This document shows, piece by piece, positions 1 to 44,338 of a stretch of DNA of 64,000 nucleotides (position 1 is the stretch's first letter; each line of letters starts with the position of its first letter). The stretch lies in contig CAJFCJ010000004.1 of NCBI GenBank assembly GCA_904063045.1, forward strand, positions 1,109,713-1,173,712. The letters are read 5' to 3'. A program made the translations under genes and the position numbers. The DNA comes from Dimorphilus gyrociliatus. Lineage: Eukaryota; Animalia; Annelida. A model generated the notes under the pieces. That model made no database searches, was not told where the DNA came from, and saw only the letters and a program-made list of their open reading frames with translations.

Positions 1-3000
1 TCTAAACGTCCCAAACTTAATCCATTTCCATTGACTCCTTTTATAATATTTGAAGATTGTTGTGTCCACCACCAGCCTCTTTCATCAGACAGATCACCTA
101 GACTATCCAGATCTTCATAGGATTCTCTGATAGATTGAAATATTATTGATCTATCAGTTTCATCAAAAACATAATTTTCCGATATATATAGATCATCTAT
201 TGCTAAAAAAGTTCCATCATACTGTCTTCCGACTACTAAACAATGATTTACATCACAGAAGGAAGGTCTACCATGAATTGACAAGGGATTTTGAGTAAGT
301 ACAAGTTGTGTGCCATTATACTTTACAACATCAATATTATTAATATAAAGAGACAACCCTTTTACTGAATGCCATGTGAACATAACATTAAGCCAATTAC
401 GTATTACAAATGTCTCGCTTGTTGTTCTCCAAACTGTGTCCTTAGTAACTACTTCTACAGTCAATTTATATTGATCGTAAACAACGTAATAGCCAACCTC
501 TGTTGTATTTGACATCAGCAATAGAGCATAATTTGTATTTGATGAAGGACGAAACCAGAATGATACAGATAGGCCCAGTTCACACTCCAAAATATTTGCA
601 AAGCATCTTGTTAAGTGATGCTTATTTGTGTACAATTGAAAACTATGATAATCTATGAGTTTTGCTGCTTTTCGCTCTCCATCGGCAAATGGGATTAGCT
701 TTGAAGTACTGTAAGAAGCTTTATATTGTCCATCAGAAGGAAATTTGCCGATATCTAGTTCGTCAAAACTAAACAAAATTCCAATTCTTTCATGTTCAAG
801 ACATTCGACACCGTCAATATTCCATTGAAAATTTCCACTACTAGTTGGTTCACTTATTAGAACCGTAGCAATTGGTAGAAACATTCCAGAATTATAAGTC
901 AAAAATCTCTCCCCTTCGTATGATATGTAGCCTTCATCAATACTTGAATCGCTAATACCATTGCAATTACAAGTTTCAGTATCATTACAACTATTGTCAT
1001 TTTTGCACGGACAAGTCATTGCAACATCAGCTCCAGGGAATGTTTTTGTTTTTACACTGAAAAGTCCTCCGAATTCCGTAACAGATCCACCTCCAAAAAG
1101 TTTATACTTATTTTCACACTTGAATGTAAACTTTTGACGGCATGAAGACGATCTACTCGATATGTTAGTAAGTATTTCCTGATCATAAGCCAAACTATCG
1201 GCCAAGGAAAATTCTTTACTCCCAGAAGTAAACCAAGTGCCTTCATCCTTCATAGGTATATGCTTATAAGTTGACTTTTTAGATGAATTTGTAAATTTAC
1301 AACGCATCATATAGGAATCTACTCTTAATGGATAATCGTCATCAAAATAAGCAGAATTCTCGTATTCCGAGCATGTTTTCATATCTAATTAAAAGAAATA
1401 AAATCTAACATTAGCTTTAAATAATATTATTTTTAATGTATTAATAAATTACCATAAAAATCGTATAATCCTATATCATCAATTATTCTATAGTGCTTCG
1501 TTGAAGTCATTAAATAGTATAAATCGTCAAATTCTCCTTTTCCTCTATTTGATATAGTAAATGGAGCTCCAGTCAATCTTCCTCCAACAACTATATATCC
1601 GTCAGTAGCTGAGCTTTCAATAAAATCTGAGGTTTTCCAACAAGTATAATTTAGCTCTGTATTATGTAAATAAAATCTAGCTCTTATAATGAGCCCTGCA
1701 TGATTTGAGACATTATATCGAAGTTGGATAAATTGCCAACTATGCATTTTTATTATTGTCCATGAAGCGCACGTTTTATTTTGACCATTAATTGTTATTG
1801 TCATATTATCATTCACGTTTGAAACTTCTATATGTGTTTGCTGCATATCACCAACCCAAAAATGGGTTCCTGCAGTTGACGATATTTTAAGCCAGAATGT
1901 CCATAAAAAATTCATCCCTAAACAATATCTTGGACTGGTCAGACAATTTTTAAAAAACTTTTGAGAGATTGCATAGCCAGTTTCATAATTAATGTGATTC
2001 CTAAAGTACAGTGATCCGAATTCTAAGCTGGCACCTTCTTCCAATTTAAAATAAACTCTAAGGTCTTTAGATAGACTTAATCCCCACTTTCCCCTGTCAC
2101 CAACTGTATAGCCATTTACAACAGATTCGAAACTAGATGTTCCTGAAGCAAATAGATTCTTCGTCTCTATTCCTTCATATAATTGAAGTGATAAAATTTT
2201 TTTATACTGATTAGAGATTATAAAATTGAATATCATAAATGTTTTAAAGCATTTGTTTTGATCGAAATCGCATCCTACATAATATTTAGGCATTTTATAA
2301 CGATTTTCAAGCAATCGACCTTTACATTCAGTTATTGTTCCAACTTCTTCAGAATTTATAAAAACGGTTAAGCCTGCAAAAGGTTTATACAAATAGTGAA
2401 GGTAAAACCATTGACTGTTTGGAAAATATCCTTCATATTCATATAAACATGTAAAAGTGGCGATTGAAATGACCAATTTTCCATTTCTAACAAAAATCGA
2501 TTGCCCATAATAATTGGGATGATTACCACCATTATCAAAGATATATCCTTCCTGAGAATCATTCGGTACTCCTGCTATGTACAGCCATAATTGAATAGTT
2601 ATTCCTGATATGCATTCCTCTATATCTTTCAGGCATTTATGCGGGGGTACATTTTCTTCTAAATAGTATCTCCCATCAAATATGTGTGCATTTGCTATAT
2701 CTTTTAGAATGGTAACCGCAGGTCCACTTGCTTTACTCTGTAGAGGCAATGGTTCGCTTATGTCACTTACATTAAAATACTTGGCACCCGGAAGGCCCAT
2801 TTGCCAACTTGATACAGTTTCTATAAATTACAGCTATTTTGTTCAAATGAACATTTTACATTAATCTAAGCTTACCTATTTTGTGTATAGCTTGATAAAT
2901 GTCCAATTTATAGGAAAGAAAGTAAAGTTCATCAATCCCAAGGGCTATCGAAGGCGAGTTACTTCCTGTTTATTATCAGAGATTTTTGATTATTATTAAA

Positions 3001-4893
3001 TGAAATGTGTAATAGGAATGATGTTTTTTACCAAGGATTAAGGGAGCTGAGAAATTGACTGAATACGGTGAAGGAAGATTTCCAATGGAACCTTCGGTGG
3101 CCAAAAATTCAAACTGATCACTTACAGAACTGTCACTCTCAGAAATTTTAATAGTTTTCTGTGTAAAAAGATAATAATCTGGAGTGTTTAGGTAATATCT
3201 TTTAAGTAAAATTTACTATAAATCCATTTATAATAGGGTCATAAATAAACAGTATATGATACCATTCATCTAAGAGTAATTTCGGACTCTGATATGTCAG
3301 AGTTCTGTGTTTCATATTTATTATCAGATTTAACAGAATAGTTGATTTCATTTGTTCCAAATATAAATAAAAGCCTGAAAAGACACTACATTTTAGATTA
3401 AATTAATAATACTATTGCTAAAATTGCCTTCATGCTGGATGCCTACATCCACATTTCCTATTACATACACTCTTTCTGAAGCATTAAATTCAACAAGCTT
3501 CAACCAGAAATCTAGTGTGAAACCATTGGGACACCAATGAGCTCCAGCAGCATTTTGATTTAAACATGTTGGATATGAACCCAAACTAAAAGAAGTGCCA
3601 TTTAATAATAAACCACCGTCTTTCCTTCCAGCAAATATTGACAATTTTTGTGGATTAGATAGTTTTATAGGTTTAGAGCCAGAAAATATGCTGTTTTCGT
3701 TTATTTCATCAAAATTGAAGAAAAATTTATCAGTATGGGTTTTAGAGAGTTCGTCTATAAAAGATTGGAGTATTTATTAATGTCTTTACGATTTTAATGC
3801 AAAAGATAAAATAGAAAGAACTCTTTATCGAAATTATAAGATACTCTGATGATTATAATGTTAATTTATTAATGTTTTTCGTATCTAACGGATCAGCAAA
3901 ACTAATCAATATACATTTCTTGAATAACGAAAAACTTTTTAAACCTTTTCTTTTCAATGAATGAATTGTAAAAGATGGAGCATCTATTATCTTTGAACAC
4001 AAATACACTGTGAAAAGCAATATTCCTCATTCATTTCTGATATTGAGCTGATCGGTTTAAACAAATAATCCGTAAGAAACCGTACAACAGGATAATATAA
4101 ATACACTTTCTTTTTTATAATAATGTCCTTGTTTGCTACTGCTTGTAGTTTTCATCAATAATAATATAGAGTTATACTATTTCATGAAACTAAACTAGAA
4201 AAGATATTATAAAACTAACTTACCGTAAATTTTCTCAACATTGTAGGTACTGTAAACCCGGTCACCTATTCTTAATTCATCAACAAGAATGGATCCACTA
4301 TCAAGATATTTTACGATTTTTAATGCTGAACCAGGGCTTGTAATGGTTTCATTCACGTAATTACTTGAAAAAGAAACAACTTCTTTATCAAGCCAAACAA
4401 TTATTCCTTGAGATTTTATATTATACGATACAGCAATATGGCACCAATTATGTAAGCATGATGATAACGTTGTCATTATTCCATAATATTTTCTTTCTCC
4501 TGTATTCAAGTGCACATATAAGGTACTGTTGCTTCCGTAATATCTCATTTCAATGCCTCTAGAATCTGACTCGATTGTAGATATTAATTCAACTGCTGCA
4601 GTGGAACTTGTTTGAATGTTCAGCCATACCGAAATAGATATACCATATTGACAATTAATGGGACTTTTTGGGCACTCTGTTGCCTCTGCCCAATTAGCCA
4701 CTATCACATCAGAAGAGGGGGTCACTTCAAGGCATTTTTCTTTAACTCCATTTAAATAAGATAAACCAGTTGTTGAAGCAATATATAAACTGTCGAATGC
4801 AGGATCATTATCAAGAGCCCAGAACCAAGATTTAGCACTGGTATATGATAATGAGGATAGGAAATATAGCAAAAACAACATGGCAAATTTCAT
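1..4893 (-). CDS. Polycystin-1-like gene copy A, 5' part only (signal peptide, LamG-like domains 1-5, start of domain 6, fibrinogen-like insert); continues beyond the left edge
   Basis: Hand-spliced, frame-consistent exons: 4893-4224, 3754-3428, 3374-3217, 3158-3032, 2965-2876, 2820-1453, 1384-<1. The last exon (MKTCSEYENSAYF...GLSLGRL) is open to base 1 but is absent from the ORF track. The N-terminus MKFAMLFLLYFLSSLSYTSAKSWFWALD parallels copies B and C, and the exons are colinear with theirs. The PKD/TM part is not visible, so the family call rests on paralogy. Confidence 0.85.
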
Positions 4894-5654
4894 CTTTTCC
4901 CACGGTTTTAAATTAAAACTAGAAAATCTTTCGAGAACAATCGGGCTTATAAATCATCAAGTATCTAATGAATTTTTAATCCGTTATTATCATAATTGAT
5001 GACGGATTTCTTAAGATCAATTCATCGGGCCTCAATCCTAGCAGCTTTCTGAGAGAAAGAAAAATAACTGAGAGGATATTAATTCATCTACTGCAAAATT
5101 TCCTGGACAAATATTCATTCAATAAAGTTACATTTTGCTATTCTTAAGTTACACCTAAAAATTTTAATTATTTCACTTAAAAACTTCTTATTTTCCTAAA
5201 AAATAGAAGTATCATTCAATTGGTTCAAGGAAAATGGAAATCTATAACTAAATATAATAATATATATAATAAATACTCTAGTTTCCAGCCTATAACTGAG
5301 GTAAGATATCGACCTACATATTATCAGATTAAATTAATTTCCCCCATTTACATATGAATAAATTTCGTTAAAAGTAGTATTTAATGCCATAAATTATAAT
5401 TTATTTAAATTGACACTCTGGGATTAATAAACATATTTCAAATTCATAATAACTAACATTTATCTTTTTTTCTTCGAAGAAAGCATTTAAAGAGAATGAA
5501 CTTCTGATATTATCAATATATAGAAGTTTTATGCTTTTTAACAAAGACTTGTAGTTATATATAATTTTCTGTTTTATATTCCGTATTGGTTCAATCAATT
5601 TTTAGATTAGCCCAATATTTGTATCAATGAATAAATAATGCTCCAAGAAAAAGA

Positions 5655-8600
5655 TTAATATATTGTTATTTTTCTTCCTTTTTTCTCATTGAATCCAAAA
5701 TATTCTTTAAAATCTAACAAACAACTTTGTATCTTCTTATCCAAATACTCTAAAACATAAAAATCACTTTTTATGTTAGATTTCTTTGCTCTGCCTCTTG
5801 CTTCATTCAGAATACTTATCAAGATATTCAGGCTTAAAACCGGTATGCATAAGACAAAAGTAACGAAAAACATGTGCCTGTAAGGAACTCTTGCTTTTTC
5901 CAAGTCTCTCATAAGTGGTGAGTTTAGAGACGATATGCAAAGAGTATACACTGATGACAACATCGTTGAAAATGATGACAAGTGTGTAACGTAAAGTAAG
6001 TAGCTCATATGAGCATGAGCTAAAAGGAAAAAGAGAAATACAAAGAATAAGGATTTAAGAGAACTTGATGCATTATTAATAGTTTTTATAAGCAATAGAA
6101 TAGTTTTATGATATTGTAGGACATACAACATTTTCAAGCATGATATTCCACTTACGAATGCCACGATGTAAGTATATGACTCATCTATGACTATAAGGTG
6201 CTGCATTTCCACAAACTTATCTTTAAGACCTATTTTCACTTTGTTGCGTAAAACAGTTTTAGCTAAAAACAGTCCAATGGTACATAGAGACAAAATCACA
6301 TTTATGAATGAAACTTTGTTCCATAAACTCTTGAAATATGCAAGTCGTTCTTTCCGCATATGTTTAACTACTTTGTAGAATTCGTAGAAAACGAAAAATA
6401 TAAATAAGATCTGACAAACCAAAACAGTAATTCCGTAGTTTGAATGATACGGATATAAATCTATCACTGCAATTCGATTCCATTTCGTAATTGCAACGTC
6501 CATTCCCTGTTCAACAACAATTGTTAAACTGATAAACAAATTGGAATCAGCGTTATATAGAGTTGATTCTATTATAATAGCTCTCGTTTTGGCATCTAAC
6601 CAGTCTTTAGGCGGTAGAATCGGTGTTGAATGTTCAAATATATAGCCCCCAGTCGGATATATATGTCGTTGTGCAACAATAGGATAAGATAACGGATTCT
6701 GGTAGGACCATTCGTTTTTAACAGTATCAGGGCTGTGACTTGAGAATGATTTGTTATAATTTTTCTTATCGATATTATTGGAGGAAAGATCATAGGAACA
6801 GTCTTTAATAACATCTTGTAGTTGTTTACAAGACTGTGAGACAACTCTAATTTGTCGCCAACGAATTGAACCAACTCTAATCCAACTTTGTTCGAATGCT
6901 CTAATCTTTTGTTCCTTCCAATGAAGTTTTTCGCCATTGTAATATTCCGTATCAAACATTGATGGGTTAAAATAAGTTGCTGTCCAGTTGTATAAGTCAT
7001 GTAATTCAGTAACTTTATCAAGATGATTTATAAAGCCATTTCGAATAGTTTGAGCAGCATGATAGCTCTTCAAGGGAACTTGTTTATAACCAATTACCAA
7101 TACTAATATGATATAAATACATGTTGTTACAATTCTTAATAACACTTTTTCTGTTTTAGAATTTTTAACGTTTTCCAGATGACTTTTAACCATATCATTG
7201 AGATTAGGTTTTGGAATATTTTCAATTGAACTCTCCACTAAAAGATTAACATTTTTTAATTATAAAGTAATTTACATAAAATAATAATAATAAACATAAA
7301 ATATACCTCTTATTCGCAGAAAATACTGGCAAATCTTTGTTGCTTTATTCACTGTTTCGACATGTTGTAAAAACTCTTCATCATCAAGATCAAAGTCAGA
7401 TTTTTTGAATAAGATCGATAGAATAAGAGCTATCACAATGACCTAAATGTGTATTATTTTAGTAGATATTACTATACCTATACTTTTTGTAATTGATTAA
7501 TTACAAACCTTAAAAGGTTGGATAACTATTACTGATTGAGTGAAGCTGATAAGCATGGATGTGAGCCATTGCTCTGATTTTGTTTTACCCCATTCTAAAG
7601 AATATAAAAGTACAAAAAAGAAGGAAAGAAATACTGTTATTGCCACTAATATCCATGAAACATAGATAAATATGGGTGGTAATGAAAATGACTTCAGCTT
7701 AATCATATAATCTCTCCTGGTCTTTTTAAACAAAGTCATAACTAAAAAGTTTATTGGAACGACCACAAGTGCCGATATTGTACCAATCCACAATTGTTGT
7801 ACGGAAAATATTAATGGTCCTAGCTTATATGTCAGATCACTTTCGGCATTTCCTGCTTGATAGAACATTGCTGAAGCAATCATGGATGCTGCAATCATAC
7901 ATAAGCAGCATCCAGCTCTTTGCACTCGAGTGAAATGGCTTCGAGTAGGTCTGGACACTACACTTAACCATAAGTGATCGTCAGTAAACTTATTCCTTAA
8001 CCACATTGGCCATAATCTTTTAAAAGAAGTAATATCTTTATTTTCCGATACGTTAACGTGAGCAGAAGGAGAGAGTTTTGATAGCAACGAATGGGCATAG
8101 AAGTAATATTTTTTCATTGTAGAGACATCTACTAAGATAATTTCTTCTAAAAACCAAGACGGTGATTTAGTTTTAATTGTCGGATTTATCCAAATTCGAA
8201 GGTTCTTTGGTTCTCCCAAACTCTTTTGCGTCGTCATATGATAATGAGATATACTCGATCTCTTTAGCTCATCTCGATATCCATCATATAAAGTTCGTAT
8301 ATTTGACGACGACTCTTCTCCTTCAATCATGAATTTTATCTGACTATCCGTTCCTGCATTTCGGCCATATCCCGTTCTAACAATTAGAGCGTAATGGTGA
8401 CGATCTAGTGCAGAATTATCCAAAAGACTTCTCATTTTCCACATTTCTTCATCTTTTTTATCAGCTCTTCTCAAAATTAGTAGAGAACACCAGAAGAGTA
8501 CCAGCATACAAATAATCAAAACCAAGACGGCTATATTGTCGCCAATTCGTTTCAATTTTCCGAATGCCGAACTAAAATCTATAGGATTCGGAGCGACGAG

Positions 8601-11600: not shown

Positions 11601-14600
11601 TATTATTCGGTTTAATGTTCAATTTTGCCTCAACTTTATCAAACACACTCCATATCATACTTATAGGATAACTATTTTCGCATTTATTCTCAAACTCAGC
11701 CTGAAAATAGACCGTCTCTGATTTGTATATGTATAATGGTTCAGTTTTTATCATTCCAAATTCACTAAGCGTTATTATAGGTCTCTTACATCTTAACACA
11801 TTTATTTTCAAGAACTTTGTTGAACGTGAATTTGAATTAAATGCATATACAGAAATATCATAAATTCCAGGTTGTGTCCAAGTGTGTAGATGCTGGAGTT
11901 TATTTCTACCTCCCCGAAAACTTACCAAAGTAACATCTTTATAATTTATTGTACAATTTTCACTTCCATACATATATTGAGTTGTTGAGTCTCCAAAATT
12001 CCATAAAAGACATGGATCTAATCCCAAGGTGGAATAACTAAACTCTAACTTTGTGACTTCATTCACTACTGCATAGTCTATAAGCTTTAAAGCGGTTCCA
12101 GTTACACCGTATTCAATTCTTAATATTTGCCATTTAGTTTTCGTACAAAATGTATTTTGAGCACTGGCAGTTACATTGAAAATCCCTTGCTCTTTATAAA
12201 AATGGGAAAATTCAAAGCTTTTCTTTACAAGTGACTCGGGTGTTACTTTATTTTTTCCAGTGGAAATAATGAGAGAAACATTTGAACCCTTTTTCCAAGA
12301 AGTTTTAAACAAAATTTCAGATAGTGGCTCAAAAGTATTACCATTCACATTAAACTCAAAATCGTCAATGCATTCTCCTACTCTAATACTTGAAGTTTGA
12401 CTTTGAGCGCTTATTATATTCTTTACTTCTCCTTTTACATCGTAATATCTTTCATTTTTGTATTTATGAGTTACAGTGAAATTTTTCAAGTTGTTTAGAC
12501 TAACATTTTCAAAAGTAAATGTTTCTCCATCACCTGTTTCCAGTGTTAGAGTCGCTTCTTTGAAATTTTCTTTCTTATCCTCCAGATAGAATACGAATTT
12601 TGCATCCTCATAGAAAGATGCAATATTCTTTGCCTCCAATAAGACTTTTGGTAATCTTCTCACAAATCTTACTCTTTTCCATATTTTTTTTGTGCTATAA
12701 TCGTTCTTTACTGCCATTGTTATGTTTCGATAACCTTCTTTTGTAAAATTATAGGTCAAGGAAACAGTTTTTACTGTTGGATTATCTCCATTCATAAAGA
12801 AGGCTCGCAATAAACCTTCAACGTTTGATTTTATATCAATTCTATAATTGGAACCTTCACTAATCACTCCTGATATGTTAAATGCCTTTCCAGTTTCCCA
12901 TTCTGTTGCCTTTACATCTATATAGATATCACCTATCTCTCTTACTACCTCAACTTCAGCAACAGCAGCTTTCGAGGACAATTGATTTTCAGCAGTCAGG
13001 TGATAAAAATGAGTACCAATAGTTATTGGAATTGGGATATGAAGGTTTTTTGTAACTTTCGGGCAAGTAATTCTATTATCATATACGGTTCTGTCTGCCT
13101 CATCAGCTTTTTTATCTAATATCAAACAAGATATCGGATCACCATCGACAATGTTCCAACTGATTGGAACATATGCATCTTTAATTCGGACGTTGAATTT
13201 ATCTTTGGTTAATTGTAAGCTCGTAATGGGTTCTTCTACTTCAATATTTTTTAACTGGCAGACCTTCGTTGAAAAGAAATTCGTTGCCAATAGATCAATT
13301 TCATATTTCCCAGTTCTACTGTAATTAAAATCTTGAGAATATTCATTATAAATCTTTACGTTATGATACTTGAGTTTTACTCCATTATTATAGTTTATTT
13401 GAAATGTTACATTCGTACCTCCATGTATTCTATACTGAAATTTATATTCTAGTTTGTTCGAAAGTATATGATTAGCCATGCTACACGTTACTGATGAGAT
13501 ATTCAAGCCAACTTTGACTGTTATAATCCTGTCTAGTATACTAACTGGATTGGTGGCAGTGACAAGTAAATCATAATATCCATCATACTGGTAAAGATAT
13601 TGAACTTGTCGCTTATATTTGTCGATAAAATTTAGCGAAGTTGTTTGGTTGTTATCTCCAAAAGTAACTAGGAATGAAGGATTTGTTGGAGCATCAGCAG
13701 TTTGGAGGAAAGTAGTCAATAATTTCAAAGGCGTAGTTGTTGTGGTAATACTCTGAATTTCTAATTTCATATCGACAATTGGATGGAAAACATTAAAAGT
13801 TACTGTTTTTGTAATGTTACTTAATCCGTTGTAACAATTCACAGTTACATTGAATGATCCTTCTTTAGAGCTTAGGACTGAAATTGTGTTAATGTAATCG
13901 TCAATAACACCTATTCTGTAAGATGTTGAAGAGGAAATATTAACATCGGTATTTATGATAATATTTACGCTAGTTCCTTCTTTAACTTTAATTGTAACAA
14001 GTGTTTCTTCATTAGATCTTAAAATAGTTTTTTCGATGCTTAATTGAAAACCGATGATTCTCTTTTCTACTGCTATATTTGTAGAATAAAAAGACGTTGT
14101 ACTAACTCCATTTGTTGCCCAAATTTTTAGAGAATGATTTCCTATGCCGATTCTCGTAATATTTGCATAAAAAGTGGTATAGTTCAATCTTATTTCTTTA
14201 AATGATTTATCATCCAATAACATGGTGGTATTAACTGGATTTCCTGTTGCTAATGTCCACCAGAATATTTTCTCTTCCTCTACGTCAAAGAAATATGGTC
14301 CTATACCTTTTAAGCCAGATATACTATCTTGTATTTCAATACTCTTATCAAATTCAAGTATTTCCCAACCAAATGAGTTAGAAATATTAACAGAAACGTT
14401 AAAAATTCCTCCGAATGTAGGCTTTACATTATATTCGTAAATTATAGTTTTATTAACTAATGGTTCAATGAAATGTTCGTCTGTCATAGGTCCATAGTTA
14501 ATTTTAATTACAGCATTGCTTCCTTCTTCTATTCCAATTTTAACCTCAAAAGTATCAGCGGTTGTTAAGAATAAAGGACTAACATCATGTAAAACAGGAT

Positions 14601-17600
14601 TTTTTAAAGGTGTACCTGCTCTAAAAACCATACTCTCTCTCGTCAAATTAGATACATTGTTGTGAATTACAGCTCTGATTTGGTAAAATCCTTCCTTTTC
14701 AAGATATGAATAATTCTGTTGAAAATTTTCGAATTGTTCTGTGAAAAGTTCAAAAAATGGCTTCTCTTCTGATGAATCAATGTCAATAATTGATAAATTA
14801 ACATAAACGTTAGTCGCCAAGTTGCTTGAAACAACACTACAATTGACACCCTTTTGATAGTAGCTTAGATTTTGTACTACAATATCTAAGTCATTAATGG
14901 GATTTTCAATATCAATTAAATTGCTGTATGATGATATATTTCCAACTATATTAGATGCATTTCCGTATAACCTGTATATTCCAGGTTTACTGTAACTTAT
15001 CTCATAGTTTTCCCTATAGTTTATATGATCTCCTGTCAAATTTTTTGTAGCAGTTCCTTCATTAAGATAAATGCTATATTCCAAATTTGATCCAGAAATT
15101 TCCAAAGTTGTGTTGAAAGTTTCGTTTGTTTTATAAAATAACTTTTCAAAAGAGATTGAAAGATTTGATACTTGACGTTCAATTTGAACTGTCGTATTAC
15201 CAGTCAATTCTGATATGTTATTCTTTGCAGTGATAGTAAGGTCATGTATTCCAATAGTTGTAAAGTTATCAGGAAGGATAAAGAAATAATCTCTGGTTTT
15301 TCCCAGAGATGTATCGTTAAATACCTCAAAAGTAACATCATATCCATGATCAAGAGTCCATGAAATATTTTTTAAGTTATCTCTTTCGAAAAGATAAAAT
15401 TTGGATATATTCAAACCCATAATAGGATCTTGAACAGTTACATTCCTGCTTAACTCTTGAGAACTGATAAAATTATTACATTCTACCCGTAACTCTACTG
15501 TAACTTTTTCGTTAAATGATACTGAAAAAGTAACCATTTCAGTTAAATTAGCAACTGTCCTGTTATCTTCAATTTCATTATTTCTATAAAGTGTGCAATT
15601 TCCAGGAGCTCCTGATGAAGCTCTATAAGAGATATTGACTGGTTTATCTTTTAAAACAACACTAGGAGCTATCAGTTTTAGCCCTTTTATTGCTATGACC
15701 GGCTGTATTACCTGTACCGTAACATTCAAGGGATAGTTGGTTTTCTCATTCCTTGCTATAATGTTCATATCATAAATTCCAACTTTTTCAAATTTATGAC
15801 GTATTGTAATATTTTCCGTGAAATAAACGGGTTTTGTTTTTAAATCAACTAGGAATACAGGAAAAGTCTTTTCTGATGTAAATAGCAACATTTCAAAGGT
15901 TTCATTAACATTTATAAAAGTGCTGCTGAGATTCATTTCTGAGTAGTGATCTAAAACAGTCACATTAAAACTAAGAATGGGCTCTGGGTTAACAATTGGA
16001 ATTGTTGCATCCAACATATAGATTTCTATGTCTGCTGTTGGTGAGCAGGGCTCAGTAGTAACAGCAATTGCTTCTGTGCAGTAACAATAGTTTATACCAG
16101 TCTTGCTTGAAATAGCACTAAAAGTATAAATTACATCACAGTGACTTCGGCATTCCAAAGGATCCACAGCAGAGCCCTTTGCATCCCAAATATCAGTGAT
16201 TTGTGTAATGCATTGAAGTTTATATTTTGCTGTATACAATTTAGCTGTTATAGTAGGAATATATTTGACTGAATATATAACAAACCCGAATCAAAATGTG
16301 ATTCCTCTGGTAAAACTAAACCATTCCAGAATCCCAGTTCATCAATTAAAAAAGATGATTCATTATTTCCAATTGATATTAAATTATTCTGAATCATTGT
16401 TTGATTGGTGCTGTTTCCAGATGAATGTGCTCTTAGAATATTGTCAACGTATACTTTCAAACCTAATTTCCAACTCCACATTACTTGAAAATGAAACCAT
16501 CTATTTGTATGAAAGTTTAGTATATGTTCCCATTGTCTATCAGGAAGATTCATCTGTATGTAAAATATATATGTTTCTTAATACAAAACTCCTCTAACAC
16601 TTAAAATATCTTATAAATCTACCTCAATTTTACAATATCTACGGAAAGGTAGACTTTCATTGAAAGAATCGCAATAGAAACTCAGCCAAGGCGAAGAAAA
16701 AATATTTTTCGATTGATCATCTGGAAATTTAATATAAAGTGACAACGTAAAAGCCAAACACTCTGTGAGATCAGTGAAGCAGTTTTCATCGGGGATACTA
16801 ATATTAATATGACCATTTTTTAACTCCGCTGCATTAGGTGTAATACTACCATTCACAAAGAAAACGTTAACAGCTTGACTGTCTACAAGGTTACCATTAA
16901 GTTCTCCAATGTCGTTAATATTTTTAAAGCCAAGCGAGAGATTTCTTGTTGGGATAGTGGCATTCTCTTTATGGGAAAATTTTAATTAATACCAGCTGTG
17001 ATAATTTAAGAGACTATTGAAACCTTACCGTACAAGTAAAAAATATCTAGTGGTCGCGTTAATTTATCCCTAAAAATGAACTCATCAATCTGAATAGAAC
17101 TTGGACCGGTATCTCCTAGCTCAATTTTTGAGGAGAGGTAACGATTGATTGGCTGATGAGTCACATTTGGAGTAAAAATTTGCTGCTCGCCATTCAAAAA
17201 GACTCGCAAGTAATTATGCGGTTCTATCGTTAAAGTAAACATATTCCAGAAGAGCCTTCGCATAGGAATTTTAAAGTTAAAGTTTCCGGTGGATGTGAAA
17301 TATTGCCCAATTAACGTTTCGTCTGATGGTAAGTAGTTCAACGATAGGGAAGTTTGCAGATTAAAAACATAAATTAAAGGATCAGATTTACGTGCTAATA
17401 TTCTTAGCCAGAATGAAAATGTTAAACTATTTGCACACCAATCATTGTTAGCAATGCATTCTTTTGAAAATGAATAATTACTAAATGTGCTACCTTGAAC
17501 TAAAATAGATTGTTTTTTTATTCCAGGCTTCTTGAAATAATCACCATTCCACGGTTCTTCAAAATGATTCATATCAAATGAGAAGTCATATTCTCTTGAT

Positions 17601-23628: not shown

Positions 23629-26600
23629 TTAAAGTTCATTAAACCTTCTTTTCCTTTCTGATAATCCAAAGTAATCCTTGAAATCAAGCCAGTGAGCTTT
23701 AATTTTCTTATCTAAATATTCCACTAGGAAAAGGTTTTTCTTTGGATTAGTTTTCTTTGCTCTACCTCTGGCTTCATTTAGAATGCTCATCAGAGTATTC
23801 AAGCAGAATACAACTATGAACAAAACGAAGCTAACATAAAATACATGTCGAAGAGGGGCCCGATCTCTATCCATTTTTCTCATTATTGGAGAATTTAAAG
23901 CAGCAATACATATTGTGTACATAGACGAAAGAATTGTTGAAAAAGAAGAGAGGTGTGTAATATAGAAAAGGTAGCCAAAATGAGCATGAGCCATCAGGCT
24001 AACCATAAAAATGAAAAATAAGGACTTCAGAGATTGGGACGCCATTCCAACTGTTCTTAGAAGAAGTATAATTGTTCTATCGTATTGAAGGACATATAAC
24101 ATTTTCAAGCAAGATATTCCGGTGATGAAGGCTATCATATAAGTATAAGACTCATCAATAACTACCAGATGTTGCATTTCCACAAATTCATTCTTTAGAC
24201 CATTTTTAACGCTATTTCTTAAAGCCATTTTAGCGAGAAATAGTCCTATTGCTGAGATTGCCAATATCAAATTGGCAAATGAAACTTTGTTCCATAAACT
24301 CTTGAAATATGATAGTCGTTCTTTTCGAAGCAGTTTAATTGCCTTGTAAGATTCATAGAAAACGAAAAATATAAATAAGATCTGACAAACCAAAACAGTA
24401 ATTCCGTAGTTTGAATGATACGGATATAAATCTATCACTGCAATTCGATTCCATTTCGTAATTGCAACGTCCATTCCCTGTTCAACAACAATTGTTAAAC
24501 TGATAAATAAATTGGAATCAGCATTAAATAGAGTTGATTCTATTATAATAGCTCTCGTTTTGGCATCTAACCAGTCTTTAGGCGGTAGAATCGGTGTTGA
24601 ATGTTCAAATATATAGCCCCCAGTCGGATATATATGTCGTTGTGCAACAATAGGATAAGATGACGGATTCTGGTAGGACCATTCGTTTTTAACAGTATCA
24701 GGGCTGTGACTTGAGAATGATTTGTTATAATTTTTCTTATCGATATTATTGGAGGAAAGATCATAGGAACAGTCTTTAATAACATCTTGTAGTTGTTTAC
24801 AAGACTGTGAGACAACTCTAATTTGTCGCCAACGAATTGAACCAACTCTAATCCAACTTTGTTCGAATGCTCTAATCTTTTGTTCCTTCCAATGAAGTTT
24901 TTCGCCATTGTAATATTCCGTATCAAACATTGATGGGTTAAAATAAGTTGCTGTCCAGTTGTATAAGTCATGTAATTCAGTAACATTATCAAGATGATTT
25001 ATAAAGCCATTTCGAATAGTTTGAGCAGCATGATAGCTCTTCAAGGGAACTTGTTTATAACCAATTACCATTAGTAATGTCACATAAATGCAAGTAATAA
25101 TTATCTTATATAATATCTCTTCTGTATGTTTATCTTTTTCCCTCTCTTTCTGTTCTCGTCTAATTTCGTCAAAGTTAGTTTTTGGAATACTCTCAGGTGT
25201 ACTTTCAGCTAGAAAAATTTTGCTATAATTTCCCAATGGATTCTGAAAAGCATATTCTTACCTCTAATTCTTAAGTAGTATTGACATATTTCAGTAGCCT
25301 TGTCAATAACTTCAACGTGATTTAAAAATTCTTCATCATCATTATCAAAGTCAGACTTTTTAAATAAGATTGATAGAATAAGAGCTATCACAATAACCTA
25401 TTTAAATATATATTAAAGTATATATATATATTATTATACAATTTACATAGTTTACGTGTTTAATTAATGAAGATTTACCTTAAAAGGTTGGATAACTATT
25501 ACTGATTGAGTGAAGCTGATAAGCATTGATGTGAGCCATTGCTCTGATTTCGTCTTTCCCCATTCCAAGGAATATAATAGAACAAAGAAGAACGACGAAA
25601 ATACTGTTATTATTACTATAATCCATGCAATGTATATGAAAAATGGTGGAAGTGAGAAAGATTTTAACTTTGTTTCACTGTCTTTTCTTGTTTTCTTAAA
25701 CAAAGTCATAATTATAAAATTAACTGGAATAACTATAATTGCCGATATTGTACCAATCCATAATTGTTGTAATGAAAATATCAAAGGTCCTAGTTTGTAT
25801 GTGAGATCTGTTTCCTCATTTCTTCTTTGATAGAACATTGCAGATGCGATCATAGATGTAGCAATCATTGATAAACAACAAGCAGCTCTTTGAACTCTAG
25901 TAAAATAGCTTCGAGTAGGTCGTGACACAATACTAAACCATAAATGATCATCAGTAAATTTATTTCTCAACCACATGGGCCATAATCGTTTAAATGCCGT
26001 TATTTCTTCATTATTCGATTTTTGGACATGAACACAAGGTGATGACTTTGATAACCACGAGTGAATATAGAAATGGTGCTTTTCCATGGTAGAAATATCA
26101 ACAAGAACGACTTCCTCCAGAAACCATGATGGAGATTTTGTTTTCGGTGTAGGATTAATCCAAATTCTTAAACTTGAAGGAATACCCAAACGATCTTTCG
26201 TCGTCATATGAAAATGACATATACTAGAACGTTTCAGTTCCTCTCTATGTCCGTCATAAAGAGTCCTTATACTGGACGACGACTCTTCACCGAGAACGAC
26301 AAACTTAATTTCACTATCGGTTCCCGAGCTCCTCTCATAGCCTGTTCTTACGATGAGAGCATAATGGTGACGATCAATAGCAGAATTATCCAGCAGACTC
26401 CTCATTTTCCACGTTTCTTCATCTCGTACGTCAGCTCTTCTTAATACAAATAAGGAACACCAAAACAGCACTATAATACAGATAATCATAACTAGCACTG
26501 CAAAGTTATCTCCAATTCGTTTAAATTTGCCAAATGCTGAACCAAAGTCAATAGGATTTGGTGCAACAAGTATATTTGATCCAAAAGATGTTAAATGATT

Positions 26601-32600: not shown

Positions 32601-35600
32601 TTCCAACTTTAGCGAATGTACTATTTTCCTTGACAATAGATACATTGTTACTCAATTCTGCTACAACTTTATAAAATCCATCTGATGTTATTGTTGGACA
32701 ATTATTTTCTAGTTTTTCAAAATTTTTCACGAAATAATCTCCACAATCCAATAGTTTTGAAGAGTTAATTTCTTGAATTTTGACAGAAATCATAACGTTC
32801 GATGCCAAATTACTTGAAGCTATTCTGAAATTTACTCCTCCCTGATAATAACTTGAATTCTGAATGCTTACGGTTATCATTTGAATTGGATTTTCAATTT
32901 CTACATAATTACTGTATAATGATAAATTTCCAAGTATATTTGATGAATTTCCGTATAATCTATATACTCCGGGTTCATTATATTTCGTTTCATAGATTTC
33001 TGTATACTTTACATTATCCCCATTTAACTTCATAAAAGCATTTCCTTCACTAAAATGAATATTATATTCCAAATTTGACCCAGAAATTTTTAAAGTTGTA
33101 TTGAAAGTTTCATTTGTTTTATAACATAATTTTTCGAAAGAGACTGTAAAGTTGGATATTTGACGTTCTATTTGAACTGTCGTATTACCAGTCAATTCTG
33201 ATATGTTATTCTTTGCGATGATAGTAAGGTCATGTATTCCAATAGTTGTAAAGTTATCAGGAAGGATAAAGAAATAATCTCTGGTTTTTCCCAAAGATGT
33301 ATCGTTAAATACCTCAAAAGTAACATCATATCCATGATCAAGAGTCCAGAAAATTTTTTTCATGTTATCTCTTTCGAAGAGATAGTATTTAGATATGTTA
33401 AAACCGGATATGGGATCTTCAACTGTTACATTTCTCTCAGATGTATTGGAACTGATTAAGTTATGGCATTCAATTTTTAAAGTAGAAATTCCTTTTTTAT
33501 CGAAAAGCATAGAGTTTACGATAGGGTTAGTCAAATTGTCAGCAAATGTAAAGTTTTCTTTGAAGTTGTTGCGATAAAATGTGCAATTGGCCAAAGTTCC
33601 AGTAAATGCCTGGTATTTAATTATGGCTTCGGTACCAATTAATACGGAATTAGGTGCTTCCAATCTCAACCCAATTATATGCAAAATTGGCTTTGTGACA
33701 TGAACTTGTATGTTTACCGGAAAATTACTCTTTTCATTCACTGCTATAATTTCAATGTTAAATATACCAATTTCTTCAAATTTGTGTTCCAGAATTCTAT
33801 CTTCTGTGTAAAATTTGAATTCATTTCCGATGCTAACTCTAAACATTGGAAAAGTTTGGTTGTCAATGTGTAGAAACAGTTTAAAACTTTCATTAACATT
33901 AACAAGATTTATATCTAAGTTTTCCCTGGTGTAATGATCTGCAATAGTTACGTTAAATGCCAAAATCGGATCTGGATTTATGAAAGGCTTTACACCATCC
34001 AACCGATACATTGGATATTTATTAGTCTCATCGCAAGATTTCGCCGACAGATTTGCAGAGATAACACAATAACAATTAGTTATGTTTTCACCAGGTTTAA
34101 CTATGCTATAAAGATCCTCAATCCCACAGAATTGTCTACAAGACTTAAATTCAGATTCATTTCCAGCTAATGTCCAATTTTCGTTTATTTCTGACACACA
34201 TCCTTCTTTATACTGATCTGCGTAAAAAGGATTTATTACTATACTTTCTGAAAGACATTAGGTATTAAGCTAACTTAGATTAAAGTACGATTGTTGTGGT
34301 GTTATCAGTCCATCCCAAAAACTCAGTTCATCAATTTGAAAAGAAGATTTGCCACTTCCTATCGATATTACATTGTTCTGATCTGTTGTTTGGTTAGCGC
34401 TACTTCCAGATGATTCTCCTCTTAAGATATTGTCAACATAAACCTTCAAGCCTAATTTCCAACTCCACATGACATGAAAGTGGAACCATCTGTCTAGGTG
34501 AAAGTTTAGCATATGCTCCCAAAGTAGGTTTGAGAATTTCATCTAACATGAAAAAATAAAAGTTTGGTGAAGAAATTAAAAGAATGATATAGAACTACCT
34601 CAATTTTACAATATCTACGGAAAGGTAGACTTTCATTGAAAGAATCGCAATAGAAACTCAGCCAAGGCGAAGAAAAAATATTTTTAACTCCATTTTCGGG
34701 AAATTTAACATAAAGTGACAATGTAAAAGCCACACACTCTGTGAAATTCGTCAAACAACTTTCATTGATCATTCGAATATTAATATGACCATTTTTTAAC
34801 TCCGCTGCATGAGATGTAATATCTCCATTTACAAAAACAACATTGGAAGTTTGACTGTCTATGAGATCATTGTTAATTTTTCCTATGTCACCACTATTCT
34901 TGAAGCCCAGGGACAAGTGATTTCTATGAACAGTTCCGTTATCTAAAAATTTTAAGAGACAAAAATACTAGAATTCAAAGGAAGGAGTAAAATTGAAAAT
35001 CGAGAGGTGAACCTACTATAATCGGATTCAGCTGAAAAATTGGATGTACTTTCATCATGGAAATATAATTCATCAAATAGTAAACGGCTAGGACCGTCAT
35101 CACTAAGAACAATCTTCGATAACAAATATGTATTATCAACTGTAGCATACTTGACGAAGGAAACGTTTTGCTCGATACTATTAAGAAATATACTCAAGGT
35201 TTCATTGAAAGGATTCGAGTAAGTTAATGTGATAAGGTTCCAAAACAGTCTTCTAACCATTATTTGAAATTTATAAGTTATCTCTTTAGTAATAAAGGTA
35301 CCAATTAATGATTCGTTATGTGGTATATAAATTAGAGAGATCATTGTTTTAACATTTAGAACAATTATCATTGGATCGATTGATTGCGCTTCTATTTTCA
35401 ACCAAAAAGATAAAACTAATCCTTTATCACACCAGTTTGGACTTGACAAGCATTTTTTAGAAAAAGAATTATTAGTTTCTACGGAACCTACGATTTCAAT
35501 GGCGTCATTTTGAATCCCAGATCTTTTTGAAAATACCCCACTCCACTTTTCCTCTATACTGTCGTCAAAACTGAACATAAAATTTTCCATATTATATCTT

Positions 35601-40874: not shown

Positions 40875-42837
40875 TTCATCAACGGCGAGAGAATGAGAGT
40901 GGATAAAAACTTCATTATAGATTTATAATATGGAATGTATATATATGTGTATATGAACATATATTCGCACACACATATATAATCATAAAATATAAGAATT
41001 CAATAAAATTTAAATATTAGATTTTTGCACTATAATAGACTGTCTATAATTAATGATTTATAAAAAATAACTCATAACACTTTCATATTTTTCTTCCGAA
41101 ATTGATTGATAATAAGTATTAGCTCAATCATTAACCAATCTAGTTTATCAATACAGAAGAGATAACAATTAATGAACATTTTTTTTATTAATTTAAAGTT
41201 TTTAATAAACTATTGAAGTTGTAAACAAACTATTCTTACTTAAAGACAAATTTTCACTTATCATCTACATCACTAATATTCAACTTTCCTTCATAAAATC
41301 GAATGTAGCTAGCAGCTCAATAAATATAGGCATTGATTTCTATCCATAACGGTATTTGAAATCAGTAATAAATAGGATTTTGGTTCATCTATCCTATTTT
41401 TTCAATTATGTAAATGTGAATTCTAGTTTTTATCAAACTATAACAAGAAAAAATTGATAATATATCAAAAAAATCATTTATTTAGTCTCATAACTTAGCA
41501 TAAATTTTTTGAAAGTAAAATAAGAATGAAATTTTAGATATCAATAAGAAGAGGAATTAATTTATACGTTGAAAGTAATAAAATAATAATAAATATATCT
41601 AAATTTCATAAATAGTTATCATGTAATTTAACTACTTTTCTCTGCCATATTAGCACAAAATATCATTAACAAAAAAAGATTGCAATTTCAAATTATATAA
41701 GACTGTTCTAAAAAAGTGTTTATTTAGGCCTAAGACAAATATAATAAGTAATTTTAAAAGAGCAAAGCCTCTTAAAGAAAACGAAGAAAAAGTTTAGAAT
41801 AGGACTAATTAACACTTGAGAGGTAGATTATTTTCTCAATACTGACTGTCCTTACTTTTATTGGATAGGTGAACTTCATTCCTTTTTCTTTATACATATA
41901 CCTATATGTTACAGCACTTTCGAAATGGGAATTTGAGTAATGAAGCAATAAACGGCGTTTATATTGTAATAAACTAATTAGAACTCTTTGATAGTGGTCG
42001 TTTCAATGTATATGGCTAATTTTCTCCAACTCTTTGTATACTTTCTTTGTATATTTAGTATGTCTATACATATTTAGTTAAAAATAATGGCTCAACCCTG
42101 TGGGAGAAGGAGAGACTTAACTAAAGCCAGTAAGTATGGCTTCTTCTTTCCATATGAGGTATTATGGAAGATACAGTGTCAGCTATAAAAAAACAGGAAA
42201 CAAGTAAATTTTTGTCTTGTCTTATACTCTTGAGCCCTTCTGCAAAGATTTATTTTATAAAAATAAAGTTAAATAAATAGGCAAGGTACTTTTCTTTCAT
42301 TCAATTATGCCTAAGTCATCTACAATTTATTATAAATTAAAAGTTCCTTCTCTCAGGTAAATAAATATTTCTTTCAAGACTCTTTTCTTTTAAAGATCAA
42401 TAGATATAAAATACATTACAATTTCAAACTTCAGTCAACAACCTACTAATTAATATATAAATTTATACAATATAAAATGCATACACCTGTATATTAAGCT
42501 ATTCAGTATTATCTATTGTTAAATATTATTGAAATATCATTAACACACAAAAATTTTAATTAGTGTTATTCGAAACTAAATTTATGAAAACCGTCGCAGA
42601 GTCTTTTTAATAATTTTAAACAGGGTTTGCATAATTAATTCTTAGAAAACATTCTACAATTCAGTGCGCTTCTTTGTGCTTATAACTGTAACCGGAAGAC
42701 GTATAAGAAGCATTTTTTCAGATTTCAGAATTCGATATAGCCGATATCACACTTCGATGCGATTTCCAACGCATTTATTAAAACGTGTAGTCACAAAATA
42801 ATCGACCCCCAATTCAATACGATTAATCGAGTCTTGA

Positions 42838-42882
42838 GTGACGCATGCGTATAAAAAAATAACGATAACGCGCATGCGTCAC
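42838..42882 (+). promoter_or_regulatory. SET proximal promoter: 12-bp inverted repeat of NRF-1-like sites flanking a TATA-like box
   Basis: GTGACGCATGCG (42838-49) ... CGCATGCGTCAC (42871-82), with TATAAAA at 42850. An ETS-like CCGGAAG lies near 42692 and a YY1-like GCCATTTT near 42885. The SET ATG is at 42926. Confidence 0.55.
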
Positions 42883-42925
42883 GGCCATTTTTGTCAAAGG
42901 CAAGCCGCTAGTGAAGCTTATAATA

Positions 42926-44338
42926 ATGACGGACGCAAAAACTAAAAAGACTCCTGCTAAAATCCACAAATCCGAATCGGATAATAATCACGATGGACTA
43001 GAGGAACTAAAAGGTATTAAAAAAATAAAAGAAAACTTTTTTGATCTAGAAGAAAACATCGCTTTCTTATTTTGACCGGCGTGTACCTGTATTTTCGCGC
43101 GCTTTCATCGAATACTCCAATATTTCAAAGCTAGAAGCTTTCTTCAAGTATATTTTAAAGGTGAAATATCTATTTACAAATCAAATATCCATTGCTGTGT
43201 ATTTTCGATCTTGAAAATCAAATATTAGAAAACACGCTTCCGCTAAAATGTATCTAATATCGCTCAAAGATGGCGGTTATTTTCCTTAAGACCTTTATCG
43301 TGTAAGTGGGTCCGTTTGATTAAGATAAATTCAAAAACTTGAGAGTTAAAAACCTTTTTTTTCGCCTCATTCATAATAAGCACCCTTAGTTTCCCTCGTA
43401 GCCGACAGAGAAACACAAGATGCTATCGAAAAAATTGATGAAGTTCAAAATGAGATCGACAAGCTGAATGAACAAGCTTCGGAGGAAATTCTTAAAGTTG
43501 AGCAGAAGTATAACAAGAGCCGTCAGCCGTACTTCGCTAAGCGCGCCGAATTGATTGGAAAAATTCCGAATTTCTGGGTCACGGCATTTGTTAACCATCC
43601 TCAAATTTCCGCACTCCTGTCTGAGGAAGATGAAGAGGTGAGATATTTTATCTAATGACTGTCACAAGTGATCATATCAGAACATTAGATAAATCTCTTG
43701 AGTTCTATTAAAACTTTTTAGCTGATTTGTATTAATTAAGTCAATTTTTCCAGGTTTTACAATATTTGACCAAGGTAGAAGTAAGCGAGTTTGAAGATAT
43801 CAAGTCCGGCTACAAGATCGTTTTCCACTTCGATTCCAATCCGTTTTTTAATAATGCAGCCTTAACGAAAGAGTTCCACTTGAATGAAACGGGTGAACCA
43901 TCAACAAAAGGTACTAACATCGATTGGCAACCAGGAAAGGATTTGACAAAAAAATCAGGATCCCCAAAAGCCGGGAAAAAGAGGGCTCATGACGAACAAG
44001 AATCATTCTTTAACTGGTTTTGCGAGGCCGGAGATGCCACTACTGATGAGCTGGGTGAAGTAATCAAGGATGAAATCTGGCCCAATCCTCTCCAATACTA
44101 TTTGGTATGTACCAAAAACATGTATTAGATAAATGAACATTAAATTGTACTCCACAAATAGGCTTCGGAGATCGATGAAGATAATGAAGACGGAGATGAA
44201 GATTGTGATGTTGATGATGAGGTAAATAATTGAAAACAGTGGAAAGAAAATATTTAAGTGTGTTTATTTTAGCCTGAAGATGAGGAGGAAGATGAAGAAG
44301 ATGTAGCTGATGAAGACGGCGATGAAGAAGACCCTTGA
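42926..44338 (+). CDS. SET: SET / TAF-I (NAP-family histone chaperone, I2PP2A), ~266 aa, 5 exons
   Basis: Exons 42926-43013, 43402-43637, 43754-44104, 44162-44221, 44273-44338 (an alternative in-frame acceptor lies 12 nt upstream of 43402). Hallmarks: [77 protein letters not shown] and an acidic tail. AATAAA at 44397. Confidence 0.96.

What the first reader, a model, noticed from the sequence alone, without database searches (positions are those of the whole stretch)
6385..7099. Gene conversion confined to the TOP domain between otherwise divergent paralogs
Seen: 6385-7099 and 24356-25070 differ at 5 of 715 nt (2 synonymous; K/N, L/S and Y/F replacements). Immediately outside, the proteins are only roughly 60-65% identical by eye (S2-S6), and much of the ectodomain is lower still. 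The tract runs from the end of S1 (VIGYKQVPLK) to S2 (FIFFVFYE), almost exactly the extracellular TOP domain. Near-absence of synonymous change means purifying selection alone cannot explain it. Known: TOP domains form inter-subunit contacts in 1:3 PKD1:PKD2 heterotetramers. Inference: conversion tracts over the partner-binding module are retained, keeping the divergent receptors compatible with one PKD2 partner while their ligand-facing ends diversify.
Basis: partly seen in the sequence, partly recalled or inferred. Interest (0 to 1): 0.85.

Follow-up and report, generated by a model that had tools for sequence, protein, structure and literature searches.

The report
Gene-conversion patch in tandem polycystin genes
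Two neighbouring, anciently diverged polycystin-1-like receptor genes share a 715-letter patch that one gene recently copied from the other (or both from a third copy); this is a clean case of a known process, and nothing here shows that selection keeps it in place.

Summary
Window 6385-7099 and 24356-25070 differ at 5 of 715 letters. The flanks inside the same exon differ at about 33% of letters. Silent-site divergence is 0.02 in the patch and 1.5-2.5 beside it. The patch encodes the last four residues of S1, the whole TOP (polycystin) domain and most of S2 in two tandem polycystin-1-like genes 17,971 bp apart. Contigs from two independent studies break at the patch edges and carry copy-specific flanks, so an assembly artefact is unlikely.

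The best reading is recent ectopic gene conversion. Conversion is not confined to TOP. The ectodomain has a second young tract (15182-15360, 3/179) nested in an older one, and a decayed third (12582-12879).

In an ortholog pair of related worms, TOP silent sites change freely (dS 0.37). Contig break points and one contig with a foreign flank hint at a third patch-bearing copy; I could not read it.

The ectodomain tracts weaken it, and so do earlier notes of this scan, which report similar sharp conversion patches on other DNA of this genome (TLR-like, adhesion-GPCR and CYP4 genes; notes not checked here).

The parts
6385..7099 (-). Converted tract in gene B: end of S1, TOP/polycystin domain, most of S2
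   Evidence: 5/715 mismatches to 24356-25070 with sharp ends at 6384 and 7100. Pfam Polycystin_dom and the start of PKD_channel.
24356..25070 (-). Converted tract in gene C
   Evidence: Same alignment. Pfam Polycystin_dom in ORF 23629-25236.
5655..7237 (-). Last coding exon of gene B (S1, TOP, S2-S6, C-terminus, stop at 5655-5657)
   Evidence: Open frame. The exon start at 7237 comes from a spliced contig of run X2. phmmer matches to solved PKD2L1, PKD2 and PKD1L3 chains.
23629..25208 (-). Last coding exon of gene C (exon start placed by homology to B)
   Evidence: Open frame 23629-25236. Offset of 17,971 to B.
7238..7306 (-). Intron of gene B (69 nt, GT..AG on the minus strand)
   Evidence: Joint 7237>7307 in a contig of run X2.
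7441..7506 (-). Intron of gene B (66 nt, GT..AG on the minus strand)
   Evidence: Joint 7440>7507 in a contig of run X2. The spliced reading frame stays open.
15182..15360 (-). Second young conversion tract in gene B, in the PKD-repeat part of the ectodomain
   Evidence: 3/179 mismatches to 33170-33348; third-position identity 0.97. Pfam PKD match immediately downstream in the same fragment (window ~14944-15162); the tract itself has no Pfam match.
33170..33348 (-). Second young conversion tract in gene C
14891..15483 (-). Older, partly decayed block (84% identity) that encloses the second tract in gene B
   Evidence: blastn 83.7% over 596 letters against 32877-33471. Shoulders with 17-24% mismatch against about 45-50% background.
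12582..12879 (-). Decayed third tract in gene B (84% identity; third-position identity 0.72-0.85), PKD-repeat region
   Evidence: The partner in C is 30570-30867.
42670..44107 (+). NAP-domain gene upstream of gene C, used as a synteny anchor to the related species
   Evidence: L010:35-1456 matches it at 78% nucleotide and up to 96% protein identity. A NAP Pfam hit is recorded on the L010 gene.

Best explanation
The tract is a recent ectopic (interlocus) gene conversion between tandem, same-strand polycystin-1-like paralogues B and C, which lie 17,971 bp apart. A break in one copy was repaired by homologous recombination using the other copy, or a third family member, as template. This overwrote about 715 bp inside a single exon and left both flanks with their old, silent-site-saturated divergence. 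Five substitutions, or polymorphisms, have arisen since. Both genes stay open, and at least B is transcribed and spliced. The same gene pair shows younger and older tracts in the ectodomain, so conversion is a recurring process along these genes. That the largest, youngest tract covers TOP plus S2 is most simply chance, or a self-reinforcing island of similarity; selection for it is not shown. Shown here: the identity pattern, the silent-site contrast, the intact frames, the splicing and the copy-specific flanks in independent data. Inferred: the repair mechanism, its direction and its neutrality.
For: 5/715 mismatches with sharp ends. dS 0.02 in the tract against 1.5-2.5 beside it. Third-position identity 98.7% against 42-48%. 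Longest identical run 322 letters against at most 84 in 20,000 shuffles; binomial 3e-112. Both ORFs are open and carry Polycystin_dom and PKD_channel. The tract tree groups (B,C) at 99/98, whereas the post-tract tree groups B with L001 of another species at 81/87. C has a positional ortholog, L010, next to the same NAP gene; its TOP region is only 70% identical to B and C, so the homogenisation is far younger than the species split. In the ortholog pair L003/L011, TOP has dS 0.37, so TOP silent sites are not constrained in this family. Contigs of two studies carry B-specific flanks that stop at the tract edges (7070, 6336) and a C-specific flank. An X4 contig bridges 7099/7100 into the B flank. 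X2 is spliced (loose end matched to C at 24325). Further tracts lie at 15182-15360 and 12582-12879. No Rfam hit and no plus-strand ORF lie under the tract.
Against: Only de Bruijn contigs were available, not raw or long reads, so no single molecule was seen to span a whole tract with both unique flanks. The B-type letters at 6537/6552/6556 appear in none of the four runs' contigs. The direction and donor of the conversion cannot be told: B and C are about 70% identical to both L010 and L001 in the tract. AU tests do not reject the alternative tree placements. No GC3 rise marks the tract, so there is no GC-biased conversion signature. Conversion between sequences only about 70% alike is expected to be rare, which fits a long-maintained island or selection somewhat better than a one-off event.
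Confidence: 0.85

Rival explanations
1. Selectively maintained concerted evolution. Conversion tracts over TOP are repeatedly fixed because the paralogues must fit one shared PKD2-type partner, or their own tethered-agonist stalk, while the ectodomains diversify.
For: The tract matches TOP plus S2 closely. Contig breaks at 6440 and 6958, and an X4 contig with C-type letters and a flank that is neither B nor C, hint at a third tract-bearing copy with different end points, which would mean more than one event over the same domain. In the tract tree the related species' paralogues L010, L001 and L004 also cluster together at 81/87, unlike in the post-tract tree. TOP-mediated subunit contacts in 1:3 PKD1-type:PKD2-type channels are established (PMC8357825, PMC12183636).
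Against: Conversion also hit the ligand-facing ectodomain at least twice. Family-wide, TOP protein identity is only slightly above that of S2-S6: 71 vs 64% and 53 vs 44%. The AU tests are non-significant, p 0.08-0.15. Similar sharp tracts are noted in unrelated gene families of this genome, in unchecked notes. No PKD2 partner was identified here.
Confidence: 0.12
2. Both B and C were overwritten separately by a third family member (copy A or an unlinked paralogue). The B-C identity would then be indirect, and the tract would belong to a multi-copy island.
For: The same contig observations: breaks at 6440 and 6958, where B and C are identical. X4 contig 21 is C-type from 6341 to 6691, then neither B nor C. 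The majority contig mixes C-type 6537-6556 with B-type 6691, even in the RNA run where the C-type flank is five times deeper. The tract core has 2.6-3.5 times the depth of the unique flanks in X1.
Against: Contig depth is not a copy number, and the source paper reports strong GC bias in the reads (PMC7854359). De Bruijn paths through a repeat can be chimeric. No third copy could be read.
Confidence: 0.25
3. Assembly or polishing artefact: one of the two tracts was written over by reads of the other during consensus building.
For: The reference is a long-read assembly that needed correction (PMC7854359). The B-type letters at 6537-6556 are absent from all short-read contigs.
Against: Flanks about 70% alike cannot recruit each other's reads. 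Five differences remain between the copies. Contigs from two studies, one of them spliced RNA, break exactly at the tract edges and hold both B-type and C-type flanks. An X4 contig bridges tract and B flank.
Confidence: 0.03
4. Extreme constraint on silent sites from an overlapping functional element (RNA, antisense gene or regulatory element).
For: None found.
Against: No Rfam match at E up to 0.1 and no plus-strand ORF of 40 aa or more. Third positions of the same region are 43% identical to L001, and dS is 0.37 between the orthologs L003 and L011.
Confidence: 0.01

Closest known systems
Ectopic gene conversion between human PKD1 and its duplicated pseudogenes (established knowledge, not re-read here)
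   Same: The same gene family, and the same process of short tracts copied between nearby duplicated copies.
   Different: There the donors are pseudogenes about 97-98% identical to PKD1, and the outcome is disease alleles. Here both partners are intact genes, only about 65-70% alike outside the tract, and the tract covers TOP.
Domain-restricted concerted evolution in tandem receptor families, for example the CEACAM family (PMC7042247) and long-lasting conversion in mammalian gene pairs (PMC2720389)
   Same: Sharp islands of near-identity, silent sites included, inside otherwise diverged paralogues.
   Different: In those cases recurrence over long times or across species is documented. Here only one species shows the young tract, and recurrence at TOP is only hinted.
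Other conversion islands noted by this scan in the same genome (TLR-like signalling module s1-080434, adhesion-GPCR GAIN/GPS s1-080620, CYP4 s1-080607)
   Same: The same genome, tract sizes of 0.7-1.5 kb, sharp ends, old paralogues.
   Different: Different gene families. Some of those tracts include introns, whereas this one lies wholly inside one exon. The notes were not checked here.
Polycystin-1-type:polycystin-2-type 1:3 heterotetramers (PKD1L3/PKD2L1, PMC8357825; PC1/PC2, PMC12183636)
   Same: B and C have the S1-TOP-S2..S6 module that matches solved PKD2, PKD2L1 and PKD1L3 chains, behind GPS/PLAT/REJ/PKD parts.
   Different: No partner subunit, stoichiometry or TOP contact was examined for these worm proteins.

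Membership tests
Interlocus (ectopic) gene conversion tract | A block of near-identity with sharp ends inside otherwise diverged paralogues, far beyond chance | tested here: met
   5/715 in the tract against 267/821 in the same exon outside it. Identical run of 322 letters against at most 84 in shuffles.
Interlocus (ectopic) gene conversion tract | Silent sites homogenised as much as replacement sites | tested here: met
   dS 0.02 against 1.5-2.5; third-position identity 98.7% against 42-48%.
Interlocus (ectopic) gene conversion tract | Tree of the tract disagrees with the tree of the flanks | tested here: inconclusive
   Tract tree (B,C) at 99/98; post-tract tree (B,L001) at 81/87; PLAT exon unresolved. 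AU tests p 0.08-0.5.
Interlocus (ectopic) gene conversion tract | Both copies exist physically, each with its own flanks, in independent data | tested here: met
   Contigs of two studies hold B flanks on both sides and a C flank. They break at the tract edges. An X4 contig bridges 7099/7100. Contigs only; no single-molecule reads.
Interlocus (ectopic) gene conversion tract | Non-reciprocal transfer with an identifiable donor | not testable with these tools
   B and C are equally distant (about 70%) from L010 and L001 in the tract.
Polycystin-1 family (PKD1 / PKD1L / PKDREJ) receptor | PKD repeats and REJ module in the ectodomain | tested here: met
   Pfam PKD 1e-27 and 3e-32; REJ 3e-20 and 6e-25.
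Polycystin-1 family (PKD1 / PKD1L / PKDREJ) receptor | GPS motif and PLAT domain after the first membrane span | tested here: inconclusive
   PLAT is above the cut-off in both genes. GPS scores only 17.9 bits against a 22.5-bit cut-off in B and is not listed for C.
Polycystin-1 family (PKD1 / PKD1L / PKDREJ) receptor | C-terminal six-helix TRP-like module with a TOP/polycystin domain between S1 and S2 | tested here: met
   Pfam Polycystin_dom and PKD_channel. phmmer matches to PKD2L1 (1.5e-31), PKD2 and PKD1L3 chains. Nearest named relatives are PKDREJ-like, PKD1L2-like and polycystin-1-like proteins at 27-28% identity.
Polycystin-1 family (PKD1 / PKD1L / PKDREJ) receptor | Assembly 1:3 with a polycystin-2-type subunit through TOP contacts | not testable with these tools
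   No partner gene was examined.
Selectively maintained, domain-restricted concerted evolution | Conversion limited to the one domain | tested here: not met
   Further tracts at 15182-15360 and 12582-12879 in the ectodomain.
Selectively maintained, domain-restricted concerted evolution | Independent, repeated homogenisation of the same domain in several copies or lineages | tested here: inconclusive
   Hints only: the contig break points and the foreign flank, and the L010/L001/L004 cluster at 81/87, which the AU tests do not back.

The most novel reading that the evidence does not exclude
The TOP-plus-S2 module is a long-lived conversion island shared by three or more polycystin-1-like paralogues of this worm, with separate events and different end points, and possibly homogenised in parallel in a related species. 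Selection would hold it together because all these receptors must dock onto one common polycystin-2-type partner, or onto their own stalk agonist, while their LamG/PKD ectodomains diverge.
Probability: 0.12. Interest if true: 0.6.

Novelty: new member of a known kind. Interest (0 to 1): 0.33.

Why it matters
This is a very clean natural example of a short conversion tract between intact genes that are otherwise saturated at silent sites. It shows that recombinational copying still works between copies only about 70% alike in this compact genome. For annotation and phylogeny, trees of the polycystin family built on the TOP or channel region will mislead for these genes. Short-read assemblies break at the tract. 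If later data showed that several paralogues keep the same TOP through repeated events, it would give a testable handle on which surface of polycystin-1-type receptors must match the partner subunit. As it stands, the finding is an ordinary instance of a known process.

Tried and rejected
- **Copy A:** I tried to reach its 3' end, left of the window. The exact look-up of ORF 1436-2800 found nothing. Three protein searches returned only relatives at 78% identity or less, and none of this species' own contigs.
- **Fragments carrying the tract:** a search with a 337-aa query found none.
- **Depth as copy number:** dropped. The tool warns against it, unique flanks differ threefold (134, 291, 390), and the source paper reports strong GC bias.
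- **GC-biased conversion signature:** GC3 is 0.27 in the tract and 0.31 after it, so there is none.
- **Overlapping RNA or antisense ORF:** none found.
- **Donor inference from related-species paralogues:** uninformative, with about 70% identity to all of them.
- **AU tests of per-domain trees:** nothing rejected.
- **L007/L010 as copy A of this genome:** rejected. It has no near-identical overlap with window 1-5000, and it sits next to the NAP gene as C does, at 78% identity.
- **Literature:** a search found no report of TOP-domain conversion in polycystins.

Full report
**Observation**

Aligned without gaps, 6385-7099 and 24356-25070 differ at five places: B positions 6537, 6552, 6556, 6691 and 7014. 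The rest of the same exon differs at 267 of 821 letters. At that rate, 5 or fewer mismatches in 715 has a binomial probability near 3e-112. The longest identical run is 322 letters, against at most 84 in 20,000 shuffles. Identity in 100-letter windows jumps from 60-78% to 97-100% and back within about 50 letters. The five differences are K/N, L/S, Y/F and two silent changes.

**What the genes are**

The window holds a tandem array on the minus strand with a period of 17,971 bp.
- Each unit has LamG-type modules, PKD repeats, REJ and PLAT; B also has a weak GPS match, below Pfam's cut-off. All this precedes a last exon that carries Pfam Polycystin_dom and PKD_channel.
- That exon matches solved PKD2L1, PKD2 and PKD1L3 chains at E-values from 1e-31 to 1e-20.
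- The nearest named proteins are PKDREJ-like, PKD1L2-like and polycystin-1-like proteins of molluscs and amphioxus, at only 27-28% identity.
- These are therefore polycystin-1-family receptors.
- Earlier notes of this scan name the genome as the annelid Dimorphilus gyrociliatus. I did not prove this. The 66- and 69-nt introns and the run years fit that species' genome paper (PMC7854359).

**Where the tract sits**

- It lies wholly inside the last exon. The exon starts at 7237, as shown by a spliced contig.
- It encodes residues 47-285 of ORF 5655-7238: the last four residues of S1, the TOP domain and about 18 residues of S2.

**Why this is conversion and not constraint**

- Nei-Gojobori dS is 0.02 in the tract and 1.5 and 2.5 in the flanks. 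dN is 0.007 against 0.24-0.49.
- Third-position identity is 98.7% in the tract against 42-48% in the flanks.
- Relatives fetched from public short-read assemblies give two controls.
  - The paralogue L001 is 69.5% identical to B in the tract region, and 43% at third positions, the same as elsewhere.
- The ortholog pair L003/L011, from two related samples, has dS 0.37 in the TOP-equivalent part and 0.50 after it. TOP silent sites therefore change freely in this family.
- No Rfam family and no plus-strand ORF lies under the tract.

**Age and orthology**

- L010 is a 20-kb contig of a related species that carries a whole gene of the same layout.
- Its upstream neighbour is a NAP-domain gene that matches window 42670-44107, just upstream of gene C, at 78% nucleotide and up to 96% protein identity.
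- L010 also aligns with C in stretches of 4.1-4.6 kb over the ectodomain, but with B only in short pieces. L010 is thus the positional ortholog of C.
- Its TOP region is 70% identical to both B and C, so the B-C homogenisation is far younger than the species split.
- Trees: the tract gives (B,C) at 99/98. The post-tract part gives (B,L001) at 81/87. The PLAT exon is unresolved.
- AU tests reject none of the alternative placements, p 0.08-0.5. The incongruence is suggestive only, and the donor cannot be named.

**Is it an assembly artefact?**

Only Logan contigs could be laid, not reads.
- In runs of two studies, B-specific contigs end at 6336 and start at 7070, just outside and just inside the two tract edges (6385 and 7099).
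- A contig with C's own flank is present; its loose end matches window 24325.
- An X4 contig runs from 6929 to 7203, across 7099/7100 into the B flank.
- Run X2 skips 7238-7306 and 7441-7506 with GT..AG ends, so it is RNA and B is expressed and spliced.
- Flanks 70% alike cannot attract each other's reads during polishing, and five differences remain between the copies.

I rate an artefact at about 3%. A single-molecule test is still missing.

**Not confined to TOP**

A scan of third-position identity along all paired ORFs finds two further regions.
- B 15182-15360 against C 33170-33348 differs at 3 of 179 letters. It lies inside a block of 84% identity (14891-15483), in a background of about 50%. 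Pfam places a PKD repeat just downstream of this tract in the same fragment. This is a young tract nested in an older one.
- B 12582-12879 is 84% identical, with third-position identity 0.72-0.85. It looks like a decayed tract in the PKD-repeat region.

**Hints of more copies**

- The contigs break at 6439/6440 (X1-X3) and 6958/6959 (X1-X4), where B and C are identical.
- X4 contig 21 has every C-type letter from 6341 to 6691. It then has letters that are neither B nor C at 6299 and 6312, and a continuation about 60% like C.
- The majority contig combines C-type 6537-6556 with B-type 6691, even in the RNA run.
- The simplest reading is at least one more paralogue carrying the tract, with end points near 6313 and 6958.
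- It may be copy A, whose 3' end lies left of the window. I could not read it. The collections searched hold no contigs of this species.
- Depth was not used as a copy number.

**The adaptive reading**

- TOP contacts between subunits of 1:3 polycystin complexes are established (PMC8357825, PMC12183636).
- Nothing here ties the tract to them.
  - Among family members, TOP protein identity (71% B-L001, 53% B-L003) is only a little above that of S2-S6 (64%, 44%).
  - The tract has no GC3 excess.
  - Earlier notes of this scan list some forty mentions of conversion in this genome. They include follow-ups on TLR-like, adhesion-GPCR and CYP4 genes with tracts of 1.0-1.5 kb. These notes are unchecked, but they suggest a genome-wide mutational habit.
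- In favour of something more than chance:
  - the close fit to one structural module;
  - the possible third copy;
  - the weak within-species clustering of TOP in the related species;
  - the fact that recombination between 70%-alike DNA should be rare unless an island of similarity is kept up.
- I give the selective model about 12%.

**Verdict**

The mechanism is ordinary ectopic gene conversion. It is a new example in a family where conversion is already known in humans (PKD1 and its pseudogenes). The 'confined to TOP' claim and the functional inference are not supported by present evidence.

Noticed in passing
window 6267-6958 (run X4 contig 21) and contig break points at 6440 and 6958: Short-read contigs break where B and C are identical. 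One contig joins C-type letters to a flank that is neither B nor C, which hints at a third paralogue carrying the tract with other end points.
   Followed up: partly
window 14891-15483 vs 32877-33471: A young 179-letter tract (3 mismatches) nested in an older 84%-identical block in the PKD-repeat ectodomain. Conversion seems to have struck the same place twice.
   Followed up: yes
window 7511-7628 vs 25482-25599: A membrane stretch before the 66-nt intron has 97% protein and 72% third-position identity between B and C. Its protein sequence (…FFFVLLYSLEWGKTKSEQWLTSMLISFTQSVI…) is also kept in the related species' L001. This may be strong constraint or an old tract.
   Followed up: partly
window 42670-44107: A NAP-domain gene upstream of gene C is conserved at 78% nucleotide and up to 96% protein identity with the related species' contig L010. 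It anchors C and L010 as positional orthologs.
   Followed up: yes
L004:2920-3591 (also L005, L006): In the related species one family member has its last exon split into two ORFs (102 and 113 aa) inside the TOP region. Its contigs end at the same letter in three runs. This could be a broken copy, a repeat edge, or both.
   Followed up: no
L007/L008 contig ends (L007:12484, equivalent to window ~6186 / 24158): The ortholog of C in the related species ends at the same letter, in the S2-S3 region just after the TOP-plus-S2 part, in two runs. A graph branch of this kind would arise from a repeat shared with another paralogue there.
   Followed up: no
window 5500-8000, run X2: In the spliced (RNA) run the C-type flank contig is about five times deeper than the B flank contigs (114 vs 23). 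This suggests unequal expression of the paralogues; contig depth is only a rough guide.
   Followed up: no
window 4207-4893, 22191-22964, 40182-40874: Three homologous ORFs (45% protein identity between the B and C versions) lie about 0.7-1.7 kb from the neighbouring units' ORFs. They look like the first coding exons of A, B and C, so the intergenic gaps would be under 1 kb.
   Followed up: partly
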